Positions 2,041 to 36,440 of a stretch of DNA of 36,440 bases are shown in pieces. Made by a program: the position numbers and the translations under genes. The notes below the pieces were generated by a model. That model saw only the letters and a list, made by a program, of their open reading frames with translations, had not been told where the DNA came from and did not search any database. This DNA is from Octopus bimaculoides (taxonomy: Eukaryota): NCBI RefSeq assembly GCF_001194135.2, contig NC_069004.1:30132948-30169387 (forward strand). Reading direction: 5' to 3'. Every line of letters starts with the position of its first letter. Positions within the stretch are counted from its first letter, which is position 1.

Positions 2041-2077
2041 TTCTTCTGATGAAGGGCTAATGTCCGAAACATTAAGA
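2041..2077 (+). ncRNA. Decayed minimal type I hammerhead-like motif (Penelope-type)
   Basis: TTCTT-CTGATGA-A-GGGC(TAAT)GTCC-GAAAC-ATT-AAGA. Core boxes, 4-bp stem II and 4-bp stem I are present. ACAT replaces the ACGT palindrome, consistent with CpG decay. Confidence 0.45.
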
Positions 2078-9861: not shown

Positions 9862-10430
9862 GACAAGGTCTGACCAATAAGTATCCAGACTGTTGCCATA
9901 GTAACGAAGCTGGAGGACATAGGGTCAAGCCGCTTGGCACAGATTCACCTTGATCTCTGATATGCATGCGCGCAAAGTTTAAACATTCCAGCTCACTCTT
10001 GCTGTTTACAGCAGTGCTTGGAAGGAAGGTGTGTAGCGTGTGATCGTCGCATTGTCCTTGAGAAAGAAAGTTGTCATGGTGATACCTGCTTAGAAGCCTA
10101 CGCAAAGTTGCAGAAAGTGCATGGGGAAGAGTGTATGTGCTGCACACAAGTGTACAAGTCATTCAGACATTTCTAAGATGACCGAAAAAATGTCGATATT
10201 GACGAATGTTCTGTGAGACCTGCAACCAGCAGAACTGAGAAAAACATCGCAGATGTGTGTGCCGCTGTGAGGGGAAAATCGTCGTCTCATCATCCGTGAG
10301 TTATCAGAGGATGTGCAGATTAGCTATGGTTCAATTCAGTCCATTATCAATGAAGATTTGGGTATGAGACACATGTCTGCCAAGTTTGTGTCGAAACTGC
10401 TTTCAGCTGACCAAAATGACCCTATGCAAA
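9862..10430 (+). mobile_element. Mariner (Tc1/mariner) remnant: left end plus decayed transposase N-terminus
   Basis: Starts ACAAGGTCTGACCAATAAGTATCCAGAC (TIR-like). From 10078: GDTCLEAYAKLQKVHGEECMCCTQVYKSFRHF*DDRKNVDIDECSVRPATSRTEKNIADV, then after a frameshift NRRLIIRELSEDVQISYGSIQSIINEDLGMRHMSAKFVSKLLSADQ. This fits the mariner HTH domains and the WVPHEL-equivalent (FVPKLL) motif. Confidence 0.9.
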
Positions 10431-10479
10431 CAGCCCCAAAACAGCAGGGCACCTTGCTTGACATTAAAAGAGTTCTTGT

Positions 10480-10560
10480 CAATCTGTTTTATTGAACCCT
10501 CAAAGGATGAAAGGTAAAGTGGACTTCAGTGGGATTTGATCTTAGAAAACAGGGAATTGG
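10480..10560 (-). mobile_element. SINE family B fragment
   Basis: GAACCCTCAAAGGATGAAAGGTAAAGTGGAC is the reverse complement of the GTCGACTTTGCCTTTCATCCTTTCGGGG core. Confidence 0.6.
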
Positions 10561-11118: not shown

Positions 11119-11480
11119 ATGTGAATTGTAAGAAATAAGATAAGTCATTCATTTTTACTTTTATCTTGTATTTGAATATTTCGGGGTTAAGACCCCTTCT
11201 TCAGGAGAAATAATTCTGAGATGTGGTGTTGCAAGCGAGCTTTTGTGCTCCAGTGTGTGTGTGTATTTGCATTTGTAGTTGTAAGAAATAAGATAAGCCA
11301 ATAGTTTGCACTTTTATCTTGTATTTCAATATTTCAGGGGTTAAGACCCCTTGTTTAGGAAAAAGAAATCAGAGATTAGGTGCTCATTTTTTTTCTTGAA
11401 GAAGTGGGGTCTTAACCCCAAAATATTGCAATATAAAGATGAAAGTACAAATCATTGACTTATCTCATTTCTTATAACTC
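11119..11480. mobile_element. Three ~90-bp units (two tandem, one inverted) carrying a hammerhead-like core; Penelope pseudo-LTR-like
   Basis: Unit TGTAAGAAATAAGATAAG...TTTTATCTTGTATTT.AATATTTC.GGGGTTAAGACCCCTT at ~11119 and ~11278, inverted at ~11390-11480. The minus strand of unit 1 reads CTGAAGA-A-GGGGT(CTTA)ACCCC-GAAATATT. Confidence 0.55.
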
Positions 11481-22503: not shown

Positions 22504-22682
22504 GAGAGTGTTACCACTAGAATAAGAATAGCTTGGGCAAAGTTTAGAAAGCTTCTACCCCTAATTGTGACAAAGGGCCTCTCGCTCAGAGTGAAAGATA
22601 GATTGTATGATGCATGTGTGCGAACTGCCATGCTTCACAGCATTGAAACATGGGCCGCGTGACTGTGGAGGCTATGTGTAGG
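22504..22682 (+). pseudogene. RTE-clade LINE ORF2 fragment (post-RT region)
   Basis: ESVTTRIRIAWAKFRKLLPLIVTKGLSLRVKDRLYDACVRTAMLHSIETWA matches the RI..AW..FR.L.P.L......LR.K.RLY.ACVR..ML.G.ETW block of RTE elements. Confidence 0.85.
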
Positions 22683-22954: not shown

Positions 22955-23790
22955 GCCATCACACAGAGGAGTTTAAGGCTCGCTGTACATATGTTGGGGA
23001 TTTATTTGTCAAAAGCTCAAAGGGAATTAAGAGAGGAAATTCCAGGAATTGAAGCTGAACTGAGAAGTCATAAAGTAAACTGAGCAAAGATGAAGGATTT
23101 TGTGAGTAGAAAAAACCCCCCAGATCCTGGTACCCTCAGACAAATGGACCTTGATCAATATGCAGAAAAGGAGTAGGTGTAAATTCCACATGCTGCACCA
23201 AGCATATGGGCGCTACAGTACTGGAATCACAGGTAGGCTCGCAAAGAAAGTAAGTACATATGTGACAGATGCACCAGAGCAGTACGTCCTTGGAACACAC
23301 CAAACGTAGATTCAGTTCAATGCCCAGATGGCTCACTAGAAGTAGTCGATAGCTTCTGTTACCCTGGTAACCTAATTAGCAGGAGAGGAAGTTGCTCTAA
23401 AAGTTATCAGGCTGAGAATGGGTTAGAAAAGGATCAGGGAGCTATTGCAAATTGCTGGAAACAAAGGTTGTTTTCCTCAGAGTGAACAATATATTCTATG
23501 ACTCTTGTGTTAAAGCTGTGATGCAAGCATGCTTCAATGGATGCACAATGTTAGTGTGCATGAATGCTAGAGTACAAAAGAGATATGGGGGGGAAATGGT
23601 CAAAGAGGAATGCACCACAGCTTATTCCACAACTCCATTTCCTGTCTTCTGTGAAAAACATGTCCAGCTATGGGGAAATATTACTTTGCTTGGAAACAGA
23701 TGAGGGTTTGTAACAGCAAGGTCATCCAGCTGTAAGTAAACCTGCCTCAAGAAATTCAGCCTGACCCATGTAAGCATGGAACAATGGATG
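22955..23790 (+). pseudogene. Older, heavily decayed RTE-clade LINE 3' fragment (RT motifs to tail)
   Basis: Collinear motifs across frameshifts: TEEFKARC-YVGDL (YADD equivalent), KVN*AKMKDFVSRK, SDKW..SICRKGVGVNS, DGSLEVVDSFCYPGNLIS, TKVVFLRVNNIFYDSCVKAVMQ, then the tail ACCCATGTAAGCATGGAACAATGGATGTTAAAAC. Confidence 0.8.
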
Positions 23791-34170: not shown

Positions 34171-34334
34171 AGGGTGACTTTTGAATCACCATGTATATAT
34201 ATATGGCTCAAATTTACAGAAAACAAAAGACGAAGATAGGTGAGGGAACGACAAGCAATGATTATTAGTTTGACGCTTTAGAAGAATGGAAAAGTCTTTG
34301 ACGTTTTGAGCCTATGATCTTCGACAGAAAATAT

Positions 34335-35215
34335 TGAGAGATAGAGGGGGTAGGAGCGAGAGTGGGAGAGACGGAAGTATAAAGAGGAATACTGAAAGTG
34401 AACGTTGAGATGAAAGAGAAGAAAAAAGAGGGATAGAGAAATATGAGAGTTAGAAAGAGAGGGAGATACAGAAGGATGAGCTGATGGGGGAGGAGAGAAA
34501 GCTAAAAGATGGAAAGAGAGGTGGAAGAGAGAGAGAGAGAGAGGAAGAAAGAGTAAGAGATTAGTAAAAGATAACGAAAGGCTATAAAAAAACCTCAAGA
34601 GAAGATGGAGAAAGGTAATGAAGTAAGTTAAGGAGTTAAGAGAGAGGGGCGGGGAGAGATATATGGACAGGGGTAAAAGAAAGACAGGTGAACGATAAGA
34701 GAGAGGAAGAGTGAGAGACAGGCAGAGGGTGGGAGAGAGACAAGATGTAAGAGGGGGAGGGAGAGATGTAGGTGGAGATAAAAGGACAGGTGAACGATAA
34801 GAGAGTGGAAGAATGAGAGACAGGCAGAGGATGAGGGGTGAGAAAGAGATATAGGCGGAGATTAAAGAAGGATAGGTGAACAATAAGAGAGAGGAAGAAT
34901 GAGAGATAGGCAGAGGATGGGAGAGAGACAAGATGAGAGAGGGGGAGAGAGTGAGGAAGAGATATGGGCGGAGATTAAAGAAGGACAGGTGAACGATAAG
35001 AGAGAGGAAGAGTGAGAGACAGACAGAGGATGAGAGGGTACGTGAGAGAGAGAGAGAGTGAAAAGCAGACAGGAGAAAGAATGAGGAGGGAAGAGATGAG
35101 TAGAAGGAGATGAACTGGAGAAGGAGGAGGGGGAAAAAAGGTAAGAGGTGTTCAGAATATCAGAAGGAACTTAGGTACAATGGCTAGAGGAGGAGGCGGA
35201 GGAGGAAGAGGAGGA
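34335..35215 (+). repeat. Purine-rich tract containing four tandem 80-113 bp units (34659-35040)
   Basis: The unit core AAGGACAGGTGAACGATAAGAGAGAGGAAGAGTGAGAGACAGGCAGAGG occurs four times. Confidence 0.85.
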
Positions 35216-35317
35216 AGCCAAACTGTTGTTGTTGTTGAGTCCCAGGTCAATATTTTTCGAGCATAGCTAAAATCGAAAGTTTCCAAGCGTGCCCATCCCT
35301 GCGTTATTTAATTTCAC

Positions 35318-35705
35318 CACGTTCAGTTAGAGATCAAGATTACCTTTTGACATTAATACTACTTCTATCACAAATTAATTATTTTTTAATAAGCCCACTA
35401 GCTACTTGCGACACTAAGATTCTGTATACCGCTGACGGGAAATTCGTCTGTTATCGCGCTGCTGGACAACTGTCACTGAAGAACCCGTAGCAGGGTGAAA
35501 TTACGTGATCTGACAGTTGTAGAATCCGTAGCAAACGATTTCCGTCTGTCAACGATATAATTTCGAGTGCTTTTATGCACTGCAAGTCCCGTGAGAGATT
35601 TTCTCACGGTAAATAATACAGAAATCTGTGTCCAAGCACAACCTCCACGCTAAGCTAGACATCAAGGATTACCTTTTGATATTAATACTGCTTCTGTCGC
35701 AATTA
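35318..35705 (+). mobile_element. Retrozyme-like unit: ~328-bp monomer bounded by ~60-bp direct repeats, containing a hammerhead ribozyme
   Basis: CACG.T.AG.TAGA.ATCAAG-ATTACCTTTTGA.ATTAATACT.CTTCT.TC.CAA at 35318-35377 and 35646-35705. Hammerhead and additional hairpins lie between them. Confidence 0.65.
35466..35520 (+). ncRNA. Type I hammerhead ribozyme, apparently intact
   Basis: Stem I ACAACUGUCA/UGACAGUUGU (10 perfect bp). Core CUGAAGA 35476-35482. Stem II ACCC/GGGU with loop GUAGCA. GAA 35497-99. Stem III AUU-ACGU-GAU. Cleavage triplet AUC, predicted cut after 35510. Confidence 0.88.
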
Positions 35706-35925
35706 AATATACATATAAATATTTCATTTAGTATATAGAGTACTTAAAAATACTTGTTACAAATAGTTTTATACTGTGGAAGCACGATAATTCGGAAGAT
35801 TTATATCTATCAAGCCTGATGTCTCCTAGCAATCGTTCACGCTCGAAACGGTTTGTTTTCCTTCCTGTGTTTTCTCATAGGACAGCGCTATTTACTCGGT
35901 TTTTCAAATAAGACCAGCCCACGGC

Positions 35926-36158
35926 CATGTGGCGTAGTGGTTAAGAGCGCGGGCTACTGACCCCAATATTCCGAGTTCGATTCCAGGCAGTGACTTGAAT
36001 AATAATAATAATAATATCAAAAATACTTTAGGAATGAGAACCCAGGTTCGAAATTTCCCCCAAGACACCTGATGAAGGCTGGAGGGTATATCAGCCGAAA
36101 CGTTGTGTTAACAACAAATAAGATGAGGACAAATATCCGTCAAATGTAAATAATGTAA
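35926..36158 (+). mobile_element. tRNA-derived SINE with (AAT)n linker and hammerhead-bearing tail
   Basis: A-box TGGCGTAGTGG, B-box GAGTTCGATTCC, AATAATAAT, then a tail containing CTGATGA...GAAACGT. Confidence 0.8.
36064..36109 (+). ncRNA. Minimal type I hammerhead-like motif (Penelope-type, dimer-dependent stem III)
   Basis: Stem I GACAC/GUGUU, CUGAUGA plus an extra A, stem II GGCUG/CAGCC, GAA, palindrome ACGU, triplet GUU with predicted cut after 36104. Confidence 0.65.
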
Positions 36159-36357
36159 GACCAGCCATGTTGTTTTATTTGAGCGTGAAGGATTTCTAGG
36201 AGGCTGAAGACATGACATCGGTCAAATTATTGTGTTTCTATGGCATGAAACTATTAATAGCTCATATTCAAATGCTGTGTATTGCGAATATGTTTATCTC
36301 TCACCGGATGCAGTACTTTTTTCGTTGTTGATCCTTGTAATAACTGAACAGTAAACT

Positions 36358-36408
36358 ATATACATGTATGTGTGTGTGTGTGTGTGTGTATATATAGACG
36401 TAGATATA

Positions 36409-36440
<32 letters not shown>
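36358..36440. repeat. (TG)n/(TA)n microsatellite
   Basis: Dinucleotide runs to the window end. Confidence 0.95.

What the first reader, a model, noticed from the sequence alone, without database searches (positions are those of the whole stretch)
35318..35705. Intact hammerhead ribozyme inside a ~328-bp direct-repeat-bounded, highly structured unit (candidate retrozyme / self-cleaving circRNA)
Seen: 35466-35520 has every element of a type I hammerhead, namely a 10-bp perfect stem I, CUGAAGA, 4-bp stem II, GAA, stem III and an AUC cleavage triplet. Stem III AUUACGUGAU is also self-complementary, so it could form between two RNAs. Stem I appears to continue past an AGAAU bulge (35458-35465 with 35526-35532) and further (35434-35447 with 35535-35546). 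A separate 8-bp hairpin lies at 35589-35609, and ~60-bp direct repeats sit 328 bp apart. Established: metazoan non-LTR retrozymes are small non-coding tandem units with one type I hammerhead that yield circular RNAs, and Penelope-like element termini also carry type I hammerheads. Inference: this is a member of such a family, possibly not described in this (probably cephalopod) genome. Caveat: the 10.1-11.1 pair is A-U rather than the usual G-C, and only one ribozyme copy is present here, so this locus alone cannot release a monomer by double cleavage.
Basis: partly seen in the sequence, partly recalled or inferred. Interest (0 to 1): 0.9.

Follow-up and report, generated by a model that had tools for sequence, protein, structure and literature searches.

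The report
Lone hammerhead retrozyme copy, likely octopus
A real, intact-looking self-cleaving hammerhead RNA motif sits in one 328-base, strongly folded non-coding repeat unit of the kind that makes small circular RNAs in many invertebrates, but this locus has only one ribozyme and the element class is already well known.

Summary
Positions 35466-35520 (+) encode a complete type I hammerhead: a 10-bp helix I, CUGAAGA, a 4-bp helix II, GAA, a 3-bp helix III with an ACGU loop, and cleavage after C35510. None of 3000 simulated windows gave a motif this good.

A covariance model built from four experimentally validated retrozyme hammerheads (coral, mussel, two axolotl) finds it as the only significant hit in the window (24.1 bits, E about 5e-5). 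Rfam's Hammerhead_1 model misses it entirely, although that model worked on control sequences.

The motif lies in a 328-nt unit that is 40.5% GC, has no ORF, and folds far better than shuffles (z = -3.7). The unit is present as 1.2 copies: 67-nt direct repeats, 84% identical, 328 bp apart.

Helix III is unstable as a hairpin but forms a 10-bp intermolecular helix, so the ribozyme probably works as a dimer.

The best reading is a dispersed, single-ribozyme copy of a non-LTR retrozyme (Penelope-related, non-autonomous), in a genome that is probably an octopus. It cannot release a circle on its own.

Not tested: cleavage, circular RNA, genomic copy number and tandem arrays. No cephalopod DNA was reachable with these tools.

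This is a new member of a known kind, of modest interest.

The parts
35317..35644 (+). One full 328-nt repeat unit (one period of the element). It is non-coding, 40.5% GC and strongly self-paired.
   Evidence: The period of 328 comes from the direct repeats. The longest ORF in the region is 47 aa. Folded as a circle the unit gives -81.1 kcal/mol, z = -3.75 against 200 dinucleotide shuffles, with 57% of bases paired. The linear fold gives z = -3.55.
35317..35382 (+). Left copy of the terminal direct repeat. It is AT-rich and largely unpaired in the predicted fold.
   Evidence: blastn self-match to 35645-35710, 83.6% over 67 columns. Family D4. Unpaired in the MFE structure.
35645..35710 (+). 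Partial second unit (right copy of the direct repeat). Homology to the unit stops at about 35710.
   Evidence: the global alignment of the two arms with their flanks loses similarity outside these limits.
35466..35520 (+). Type I hammerhead ribozyme motif with helices I, II and III and the full catalytic core.
   Evidence: Read directly from the sequence. It is the only descriptor hit in the window, and 0 of 3000 simulations were as good. Model R1, built from validated retrozyme hammerheads, gives 24.1 bits, E = 4.9e-5, over 35470-35516. Helices I and II are kept in the MFE of the 55-mer and of the whole unit.
35476..35482 (+). Core box CUGAAGA (C3-A9, with N7 = A).
35483..35496 (+). Helix II (ACCC/GGGU, 4 bp, with A10.1-U11.1 at its base) and the 6-nt loop 2 GUAGCA.
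35497..35510 (+). G12-A13-A14, then the 10-nt near-palindromic helix III segment AUUACGUGAU, then the cleavage nucleotide C17. The predicted scissile bond lies between 35510 and 35511.
   Evidence: As a hairpin, helix III costs +1.8 kcal/mol (-15.0 against the MFE of -16.8). In a two-molecule fold it forms a 10-bp intermolecular helix, and the dimer is 11.7 kcal/mol more stable than two monomers.
35434..35465 (+). 5' strand of the outward extension of helix I (rod-like arm).
   Evidence: MFE structures. Pairing checked by eye.
35521..35546 (+). 3' strand of the outward extension of helix I, starting with the AGAAU bulge.
35566..35581 (+). 5-bp hairpin (AGUGC / GCACU, loop UUUUAU).
   Evidence: MFE and the sequence.
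35589..35609 (+). 8-bp hairpin (CCGUGAGA / UCUCACGG, loop GAUUU).
   Evidence: MFE and the sequence.

Best explanation
Positions 35317-35710 are a dispersed genomic copy, 1.2 units long, of a small non-coding retroelement of the metazoan non-LTR retrozyme kind. That kind is thought to be a non-autonomous relative of Penelope-like elements.

How the family would work (inferred by analogy with the coral, mussel and axolotl elements, not shown here):
1. Transcripts that span two or more units bring two hammerheads together.
2. Their 10-nt palindromic helix III segments pair with each other to form the active double hammerhead.
3. Each unit is cut after the C equivalent to 35510.
4. The 328-nt monomer, with 5'-OH and 2',3'-cyclic phosphate ends, is closed by the RtcB tRNA ligase into a highly paired circular RNA.
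5. A reverse transcriptase supplied in trans, most likely from a Penelope-like element, copies the circle or multimer and integrates the cDNA.

This particular locus carries a single ribozyme. At most it can cut a read-through transcript once, and it cannot release a monomer.

Shown here: the motif, its statistical significance, its fit to validated retrozyme hammerheads, the unit's size, composition and fold, and the predicted preference for a dimeric helix III.

Inferred: cleavage activity, circular RNA, the mobilising enzyme, and the existence of further copies.
For: - Complete hammerhead at 35466-35520. It is the only descriptor hit, and 0 of 3000 simulated windows were as good.
- Model R1 was built from the four hammerheads whose self-cleavage was demonstrated in PMC7229834 (sequences from its Supplementary Table 2; alignment A1). 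It scores the site 24.1 bits, E = 4.9e-5. The next hit in 36 kb scores 9.3 bits.
- The architecture parallels those ribozymes: UCA-CUGANGA, a 4-bp helix II with a 5-6-nt loop, a 6-10-nt palindromic helix III segment, and C|UG at the cut. The coral ribozyme also has a 10-nt helix III palindrome.
- The unit is 328 nt and 40.5% GC, has no ORF above 47 aa, and has a circular-fold z of -3.75. The published criteria are 150-450 bp, low GC, and highly self-paired circles of 170-400 nt.
- The dimer fold gains 11.7 kcal/mol through a 10-bp intermolecular helix III, as described for newt, axolotl and Penelope hammerheads.
- The copy runs uninterrupted across the cleavage/ligation site and ends in the unpaired AT-rich segment, with terminal redundancy. 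This is what a cDNA made on a circular or multimeric template would look like (inference).
- CpG observed/expected is 1.18 in the element against 0.53 in the window, so the element is compositionally foreign to its surroundings.
- Penelope-type minimal hammerheads occur in the same window at 36064-36109 and 2042-2077. None appeared in 300 simulations. This fits the reported co-occurrence of retrozymes and Penelope-like elements.
- Dispersed monomer copies of retrozyme families are described in 10.64898/2026.07.22.740005.
Against: - There is only one ribozyme and 1.2 units. The defining tandem arrangement is absent here.
- No second copy lies in the window, and no relative was found anywhere I could search. 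Family status, covariation and copy number are therefore untested.
- Rfam Hammerhead_1 gives no hit even at E <= 10 on 78 nt, although the same model detects control type I hammerheads at 36.1 bits.
- The 10.1-11.1 pair is A-U, whereas G-C is the most conserved helix pair after 15.1-16.1.
- Helix I runs 10 bp without the internal loop that normally contacts loop 2. Fast cleavage at physiological Mg2+ is therefore doubtful.
- The two repeat arms differ at 16% of positions. If they were identical at insertion, the copy is old and probably inert.
- No significant target-site duplication was found.
Confidence: 0.72

Rival explanations
1. It is a 5'-truncated remnant, or solo terminal repeat (pLTR), of an autonomous Penelope-like element, not a member of a separate non-autonomous retrozyme family. 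The partial tandem would be the usual Penelope insertion structure.
For: Penelope-like elements carry type I hammerheads in their terminal repeats, insert as partial tandems, and favour microsatellite-rich DNA. The locus sits between a GA-rich minisatellite and (TG)n/(TA)n tracts. Penelope-type minimal hammerheads are present nearby. A 2026 preprint finds retrozymes to be sister to pLTRs, so the boundary between the two is thin.
Against: The repeats are 328 bp apart with no ORF between them, and no RT/GIY-YIG signal appeared in the ten stop-free segments tested. The repeated arms do not contain the ribozyme, whereas a pLTR does. The ribozyme architecture is the retrozyme type (helix II of 4 bp, helix I of at least 10 bp, helix III with a loop, no bulged base after A9). 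The Penelope minimal type has helix II of 6-8 bp, helix I of 4-5 bp, a bulged base and no helix III loop. It also scores 24.1 bits with the retrozyme model, against 8.6 bits for the neighbouring minimal motif.
Confidence: 0.17
2. It is a single-copy hammerhead recruited by the host, for example to process an intron or UTR as the conserved amniote hammerheads do, and is kept intact by selection at this locus.
For: The 55-nt motif is flawless while the flanking repeat arms differ at 16% of sites. CpG is fully retained (o/e 1.18 against 0.53). Isolated, conserved hammerheads with roles in mRNA biogenesis exist in amniotes.
Against: No gene, exon or conserved context was identified in the window. 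The integrity argument rests on the unproven assumption that the arms were identical at insertion. A ribozyme that needs a partner copy for helix III is a poor stand-alone processor. No orthologous sequence could be examined.
Confidence: 0.06
3. It is a chance hammerhead-like motif, or a different small RNA such as a C/D-box snoRNA. The CUGAAGA and CUGA boxes with a terminal stem gave weak snoRNA matches.
For: Rfam gives no hammerhead hit. The best weak matches on the 78-nt stretch are SNORD70 (16 bits, E = 2.6) and SNORD78 (11.7 bits).
Against: 0 of 3000 simulated windows produced a motif this good. The retrozyme-trained model gives E about 5e-5. The snoRNA scores are far below gathering (16 against 50 bits). 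The putative D box lies inside the perfect 10-bp helix, and the putative C box has two mismatches to RUGAUGA. The control shows that Rfam's 45-position Hammerhead_1 model is narrow: only 3 of the 9 canonical pattern matches in the four control loci pass it.
Confidence: 0.03

Closest known systems
Metazoan non-LTR retrozymes (Cervera & de la Pena 2020, PMC7229834), especially the Mytilus galloprovincialis ~350-390-bp and Acropora millepora ~225-245-bp elements
   Same: One type I hammerhead per non-coding unit of a few hundred bases. Low GC. A strongly self-paired predicted circle. Helix II of 4 bp. A short helix III with a palindromic segment (10 nt in coral, as here). The cut occurs in UC|UG. 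As in the mussel ribozymes, the usual loop 1/loop 2 contact nucleotides are missing.
   Different: Only 1.2 units and one ribozyme at this locus. A-U instead of G-C at 10.1-11.1. Helix I is uninterrupted for 10 bp. There is no sequence similarity to the mussel or coral units outside the ribozyme (best blastn E = 0.32). Neither expression nor circularity is known.
Newt/axolotl satellite 2 hammerhead repeats (330 and 350 bp)
   Same: Almost the same unit length (328 against 330-350). A weak helix III that makes the ribozyme depend on a dimer. One axolotl family also departs from G10.1-C11.1 (a U.U mismatch) and still cleaves.
   Different: The amphibian units occur in huge tandem arrays and keep the loop 1/loop 2 contacts (Amex1). 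Their sequences are unrelated, and the host is a vertebrate.
Minimal hammerheads of Penelope-like elements (Cervera & de la Pena 2014, PMC4209133)
   Same: Type I topology, a palindromic helix III, presumed action as dimers, and association with retroelement repeats. Genuine examples lie in the same window (36064-36109 and 2042-2077).
   Different: The Penelope minimal motifs have a bulged base after A9, a long helix II, a short helix I and no helix III loop. They also sit in repeats that flank an RT/GIY-YIG ORF. None of this applies to the candidate.
Rfam RF00163 Hammerhead_1
   Same: The same ribozyme class and the same topology.
   Different: The candidate does not reach even E <= 10 against this model, although the model is present and working.

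Membership tests
Hammerhead ribozyme, type I | Conserved core: C3-U4-G5-A6-N7-G8-A9, G12-A13-A14, the A15.1-U16.1 pair, and H17 at the cleavage site | tested here: met
   All are present at 35476-35482, 35497-35499, 35500/35509 and C35510.
Hammerhead ribozyme, type I | Three helices around the core, with helix I open and helices II and III closed by loops | tested here: met
   Helices of 10, 4 and 3 bp. Helices I and II are in the MFE. Full-length match to model R1.
Hammerhead ribozyme, type I | G10.1-C11.1 base pair (highly conserved, not absolute) | tested here: not met
   The pair is A35483-U35496. Natural active exceptions exist: a U.U mismatch in axolotl Ax353 and in bacterial hammerheads.
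Hammerhead ribozyme, type I | Score at or above the gathering threshold of Rfam RF00163 | tested here: not met
   No hit at gathering or at E <= 10. Positive control: 36.1 bits on phage contigs.
Hammerhead ribozyme, type I | Loop 1 / loop 2 tertiary contact of 'extended' fast-cleaving hammerheads (helix I interrupted about 5-7 bp from the core) | tested here: not met
   Helix I is perfect for 10 bp, and the first irregularity is the AGAAU bulge at 35521-35525. The mussel retrozyme ribozymes also lack the canonical contact.
Hammerhead ribozyme, type I | Site-specific Mg2+-dependent self-cleavage | not testable with these tools
   Needs in vitro transcription of monomer and dimer constructs.
Metazoan non-LTR retrozyme | Type I hammerhead of the kind found in validated retrozymes | tested here: met
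   Model R1 (coral, mussel and two axolotl ribozymes): 24.1 bits, E = 4.9e-5, the sole significant hit.
Metazoan non-LTR retrozyme | Unit of about 150-450 bp with low GC (<45-50%), no ORF, and no LTR/PBS/PPT | tested here: met
   328 bp and 40.5% GC. The longest ORF is 47 aa. The 67-nt arms are unit redundancy and carry no ribozyme. PBS and PPT were not searched for specifically.
Metazoan non-LTR retrozyme | Tandem arrangement (dimers to multimers) with one ribozyme per unit | tested here: not met
   1.2 units, one ribozyme, and no further copy in 36 kb. Monomer derivatives of retrozyme families are reported elsewhere.
Metazoan non-LTR retrozyme | Predicted highly self-paired circular monomer | tested here: met
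   Circular MFE -81.1 kcal/mol, z = -3.75, 0 of 200 shuffles as low.
Metazoan non-LTR retrozyme | Many genomic copies, and expression as linear and circular RNA | not testable with these tools
   No cephalopod DNA or RNA collection was available. Indirect routes found nothing.
Penelope-like element (terminal repeat) | Direct repeats flanking an ORF with reverse transcriptase and GIY-YIG endonuclease, each repeat carrying the ribozyme | tested here: not met
   The repeats are 328 bp apart. There is no long ORF and no Pfam hit in the ten segments tested. The ribozyme lies between the repeats, not in them.
Penelope-like element (terminal repeat) | Minimal hammerhead architecture (bulged base after A9, long helix II, short helix I, no helix III loop) | tested here: not met
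   The minimal-motif descriptor picks 36069 and 2046 but not the candidate.
Plant-type LTR retrozyme | Type III hammerhead inside each of two ~350-bp LTRs | tested here: not met
   The topology is type I, there is a single ribozyme, and it lies outside the 67-nt repeats.
Sm-alpha-like tRNA-headed SINE with hammerhead | Pol III A and B boxes upstream of the ribozyme | tested here: not met
   No A or B box at <= 1 mismatch within 35317-35710. The neighbouring element at 35920-36155 does have them.
C/D-box snoRNA | C box RUGAUGA and D box CUGA next to a short terminal stem, and an Rfam family score | tested here: not met
   SNORD70 scores 16 bits against a gathering score of 50. The 'C box' has two mismatches, and the 'D box' is buried in the 10-bp helix.

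The most novel reading that the evidence does not exclude
This copy is the visible tip of an undescribed octopod retrozyme family. Its hammerhead would be an obligate-dimer variant: A10.1-U11.1, an uninterrupted helix I of at least 10 bp, and a 10-nt palindromic helix III. Rfam-based annotation cannot see it. Elsewhere in the genome the family would form tandem arrays that are transcribed into abundant ~328-nt circular RNAs.
Probability: 0.4. Interest if true: 0.45.

Novelty: new member of a known kind. Interest (0 to 1): 0.3.

Why it matters
If the family exists in tandem arrays, it would extend ribozyme-made circular RNAs to cephalopods, where I found no report of retrozymes in the searchable literature. 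The only related report is 235 Rfam hammerhead hits in the giant squid.

It would also add a natural A10.1-U11.1 hammerhead that the standard Rfam model misses. This is a practical warning that Rfam-based counts of hammerheads in invertebrate genomes are underestimates.

The biology itself is already established in corals, mussels, insects and amphibians: a self-cleaving repeat, RtcB ligation, a circular RNA, and probable Penelope-dependent spread. This locus would add a member and not a new principle.

Tried and rejected
1. Rfam at gathering score on the whole window, then at E <= 10 on 551 nt and 78 nt. No hammerhead hit. I checked that the model is present and working on phage contigs and concluded that it is narrow.

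2. Fishing for other copies:
- Translated every stop-free frame of the unit and searched 5.8 billion proteins. Nothing.
- Exact look-up of two window ORFs. Nothing.
- Look-up of the Octopus proteins found later, to sample octopus DNA. Not on record.

3. DNA pattern scans with the ribozyme:
- Metagenomes, exact and degenerate patterns: 0.
- Viral contigs: 0.
- Bacterial and archaeal genomes: 5 hits, which by my own estimate is no more than chance would give; not followed up.

4. Searching papers for the ribozyme's sequence strings returned only unrelated primers.

5. blastn of the unit against the published mussel and coral retrozymes. No similarity outside the core.

6. Target-site duplication around 35317-35710. 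The best match, TATTTAATTT/TATTTCATTT, is within the chance range.

7. A two-ribozyme reading, in which the hammerhead at 35476 and the minimal one at 36069 (same strand, ~590 nt apart) release a ~600-nt RNA. I rejected it for three reasons. Their helix III segments differ in length (10 against 4 nt), so they cannot form a double hammerhead. The minimal one belongs to a separate insert bounded by an 11-bp duplication. The sequence between them is unrelated flank.

8. Reading the A after A9 as the bulged base typical of Penelope motifs. I rejected it because it would leave U35496 unpaired between helix II and G12, whereas A-U pairing explains both bases.

9. Pfam scan of ten stop-free segments for RT/GIY-YIG. 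Nothing.

Full report
**The window.** It is a gapped eukaryotic scaffold with 5022 N. It is crowded with microsatellites and has no convincing long ORF. Translated fragments of transposon proteins at 10271-10492, 22520-22662 and 23237-23482 have as their only named matches two Octopus bimaculoides uncharacterised proteins, at 73-75% identity; two unnamed metaclust sequences match at 75-81%. I could not confirm the species.

**The observation.** Read directly, 35466-35520 on the + strand is ACAACUGUCA / CUGAAGA / ACCC-GUAGCA-GGGU / GAA / AUU-ACGU-GAU / C / UGACAGUUGU.
- This gives a perfect 10-bp helix I, the C3-A9 box, a 4-bp helix II with A-U at 10.1-11.1, and G12-A14.
- Helix III has A15.1-U16.1, U-A and U.G pairs closed by ACGU. 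C17 is followed by the 3' strand of helix I.
- The predicted cut lies between 35510 and 35511.
- The outward continuation of helix I, the 8-bp hairpin at 35589-35609 and the direct repeats all check out. The repeats are 35317-35382 and 35645-35710, with 67 aligned positions, 83.6% identity and an offset of 328.

**Is it chance?** A descriptor scan of both strands finds only this site. In 3000 windows simulated with a second-order Markov model of the window, 32 motifs met minimal thresholds. None reached helix I >= 8, II >= 4 and III >= 3 bp, whereas the real motif has 10, 4 and 3. The motif is not a chance match.

**Rfam.** No hammerhead family is hit at gathering score, nor at E <= 10 when only 551 or 78 nt are searched.
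- The weak hits on the short stretch are C/D snoRNA models (SNORD70, 16 bits against a gathering score of 50). This reflects the resemblance of CUGAAGA...CUGA plus a terminal stem to C and D boxes.
- As a control I pulled canonical hammerhead patterns from viral contigs. RF00163 is present and scores three of them 36.1 bits against a gathering score of 34. The four loci I scanned hold nine such patterns, and the other six are missed.
- The 45-position Rfam model is therefore narrow, and its silence counts only weakly against the candidate.

**A fairer model.** The supplement of Cervera & de la Pena 2020 (PMC7229834) prints four genomic retrozyme clones whose self-cleavage was shown experimentally: coral Amil224, mussel Mg353, and axolotl Ax353 and Ax330.
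- I aligned their hammerheads (A1) and built a covariance model with the canonical structure (R1).
- I scanned the whole window with the filters off. The candidate is the top hit, full length, at 24.1 bits with E about 5e-5. The next hit scores 9.3 bits with E = 1.5.
- The candidate shares with these ribozymes UCA before CUGANGA, a 4-bp helix II with a 5-6-nt loop, a 6-10-nt palindromic helix III segment, and UG after the cut.
- The coral ribozyme, the fastest of the four, also has a 10-nt palindrome (ACAGUACUGU).

**Folding.**
- The monomeric helix III hairpin is unfavourable. The full hammerhead fold is -15.0 kcal/mol, against -16.8 for the MFE, which leaves helix III open.
- Two 77-nt copies cofold to -60.1 kcal/mol, against 2 x -24.2, through a 10-bp intermolecular helix III.
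- This is the double-hammerhead arrangement described for newt, axolotl and Penelope ribozymes.
- AUUACGUGAU is one transition away from the perfect palindrome AUUACGUAAU.

**The unit.**
- One period, closed into a circle at the cleavage site, is 328 nt and 40.5% GC. It folds to -81.1 kcal/mol, z = -3.75, with none of 200 dinucleotide shuffles as low. The linear fold gives z = -3.55.
- No ORF exceeds 47 aa.
- These values match the published description of non-LTR retrozymes: 150-450-bp units, low GC, highly self-paired circles of 170-400 nt, mussel units of 350-390 bp and newt units of ~330 bp.
- Outside the ribozyme there is no similarity to the mussel or coral units. This is expected, because the sequences are species-specific.

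**What this locus is not.**
- It has 1.2 units and one ribozyme, so the defining tandem arrangement is absent. No second copy exists in the 36 kb.
- The repeats do not contain the ribozyme and lie 328 bp apart with no ORF between them. It is therefore neither a plant-type LTR retrozyme nor an intact Penelope-like element.
- It has no pol III A or B boxes, unlike the Schistosoma Sm-alpha type.
- No significant target-site duplication flanks it.

**Age and constraint.**
- The two arms differ at about 16% of sites. If they were identical at insertion, as they would be for a cDNA made by going more than once round one circle, the copy is old. An untouched 55-nt ribozyme would then be somewhat unlikely: my rough estimate is a few per cent, and this is inference.
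- Against great age, CpG observed/expected is 1.18 in the element and 0.53 in the window.
- I cannot resolve this conflict. The arms may come from different monomers of a heterogeneous multimer.

**Context.**
- Using the features listed by Cervera & de la Pena 2014, I found two Penelope-type minimal hammerheads in the window. These features are a bulged base after A9, G10.1-C11.1, a short helix I and a palindromic ACGU without a helix III loop.
- A clean one lies at 36064-36109 and a decayed one at 2042-2077. None appeared in 300 simulations.
- The first lies in a SINE-like insert with pol III boxes.
- The genome therefore hosts Penelope-type hammerhead elements. This fits the reported co-occurrence of retrozymes with Penelope-like elements, and the recent proposal that retrozymes derive from Penelope terminal repeats.

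**Relatives.** I could not reach any cephalopod DNA. A translated-frame search, exact ORF look-ups, pattern scans of metagenomes, viral contigs and prokaryotic genomes, and a literature string search all found nothing informative. Covariation, copy number and tandem arrays remain untested.

**Verdict.** The motif is real and belongs to the retrozyme type of hammerhead.
- The locus is best read as a dispersed, probably inert monomer copy of a non-LTR retrozyme family in an octopod genome (confidence about 0.7).
- The main rival is a truncated Penelope terminal repeat (about 0.17).
- The class has been known since 1987 and was characterised in 2020, and hammerhead hits are already reported for a squid genome.
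- It is a new member of a known kind and of modest interest. The useful side result is that Rfam's type I model misses it.

Noticed in passing
window 35909-36166 (element 35920-36155; hammerhead 36064-36109, + strand): A SINE-like insert of about 236 bp. It has an exact pol III A box (TGGCGTAGTGG at 35930) and a B box with one mismatch (35974). It carries a clean Penelope-type minimal hammerhead: GACAC / CUGAUGA / bulged A / GGCUG-10 nt-CAGCC / GAA / ACGU / U / GUGUU. It is bounded by an exact 11-bp repeat, TAAGACCAGCC (35909-35919 and 36156-36166). A tRNA-headed SINE with a Penelope-style ribozyme tail would suggest mobilisation by Penelope-like elements. Rfam's tRNA model does not hit the head.
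   Followed up: partly
window 2042-2077 (+) and about 11168-11204 (-): A second minimal hammerhead, partly decayed (ACAU in place of ACGU, helix I of 4 bp), lies at 2042-2077. A core-only look-alike (CUGAAGA-A-GGGG..CCCC-GAAAUAUU) without a helix I lies near 11204 on the minus strand.
   Followed up: partly
window 35810-35847 and 36178-36215: A 38-nt inverted repeat, 76% complementary, brackets the SINE-like insert. The insert may have landed inside an older foldback or MITE-like sequence.
   Followed up: no
window 34278-35220: A purine-rich (GA) minisatellite with units of about 86-113 bp lies immediately upstream of the element. (TG)n/(TA)n tracts lie at 36362-36440.
   Followed up: no
window 35317-35710 against the whole window: CpG observed/expected is 1.18 in the element and 0.53 overall (0.24-0.82 in 3-kb bins). 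This is hard to reconcile with the 16% divergence of the element's two repeat arms.
   Followed up: partly
window 10271-10492, 22520-22662, 23237-23482: Stop-free fragments that look like transposon proteins. Their only named database matches are two Octopus bimaculoides uncharacterised proteins at 73-75% identity; two unnamed metaclust sequences match at 75-81%. Pfam gave no hit on them.
   Followed up: partly
locus L068 (IMG/VR contig, 366 nt): The control scan for canonical hammerheads returned a 366-nt 'viral' contig with a hammerhead pattern, possibly a viroid-like or satellite circular RNA. I did not open or print it.
   Followed up: no
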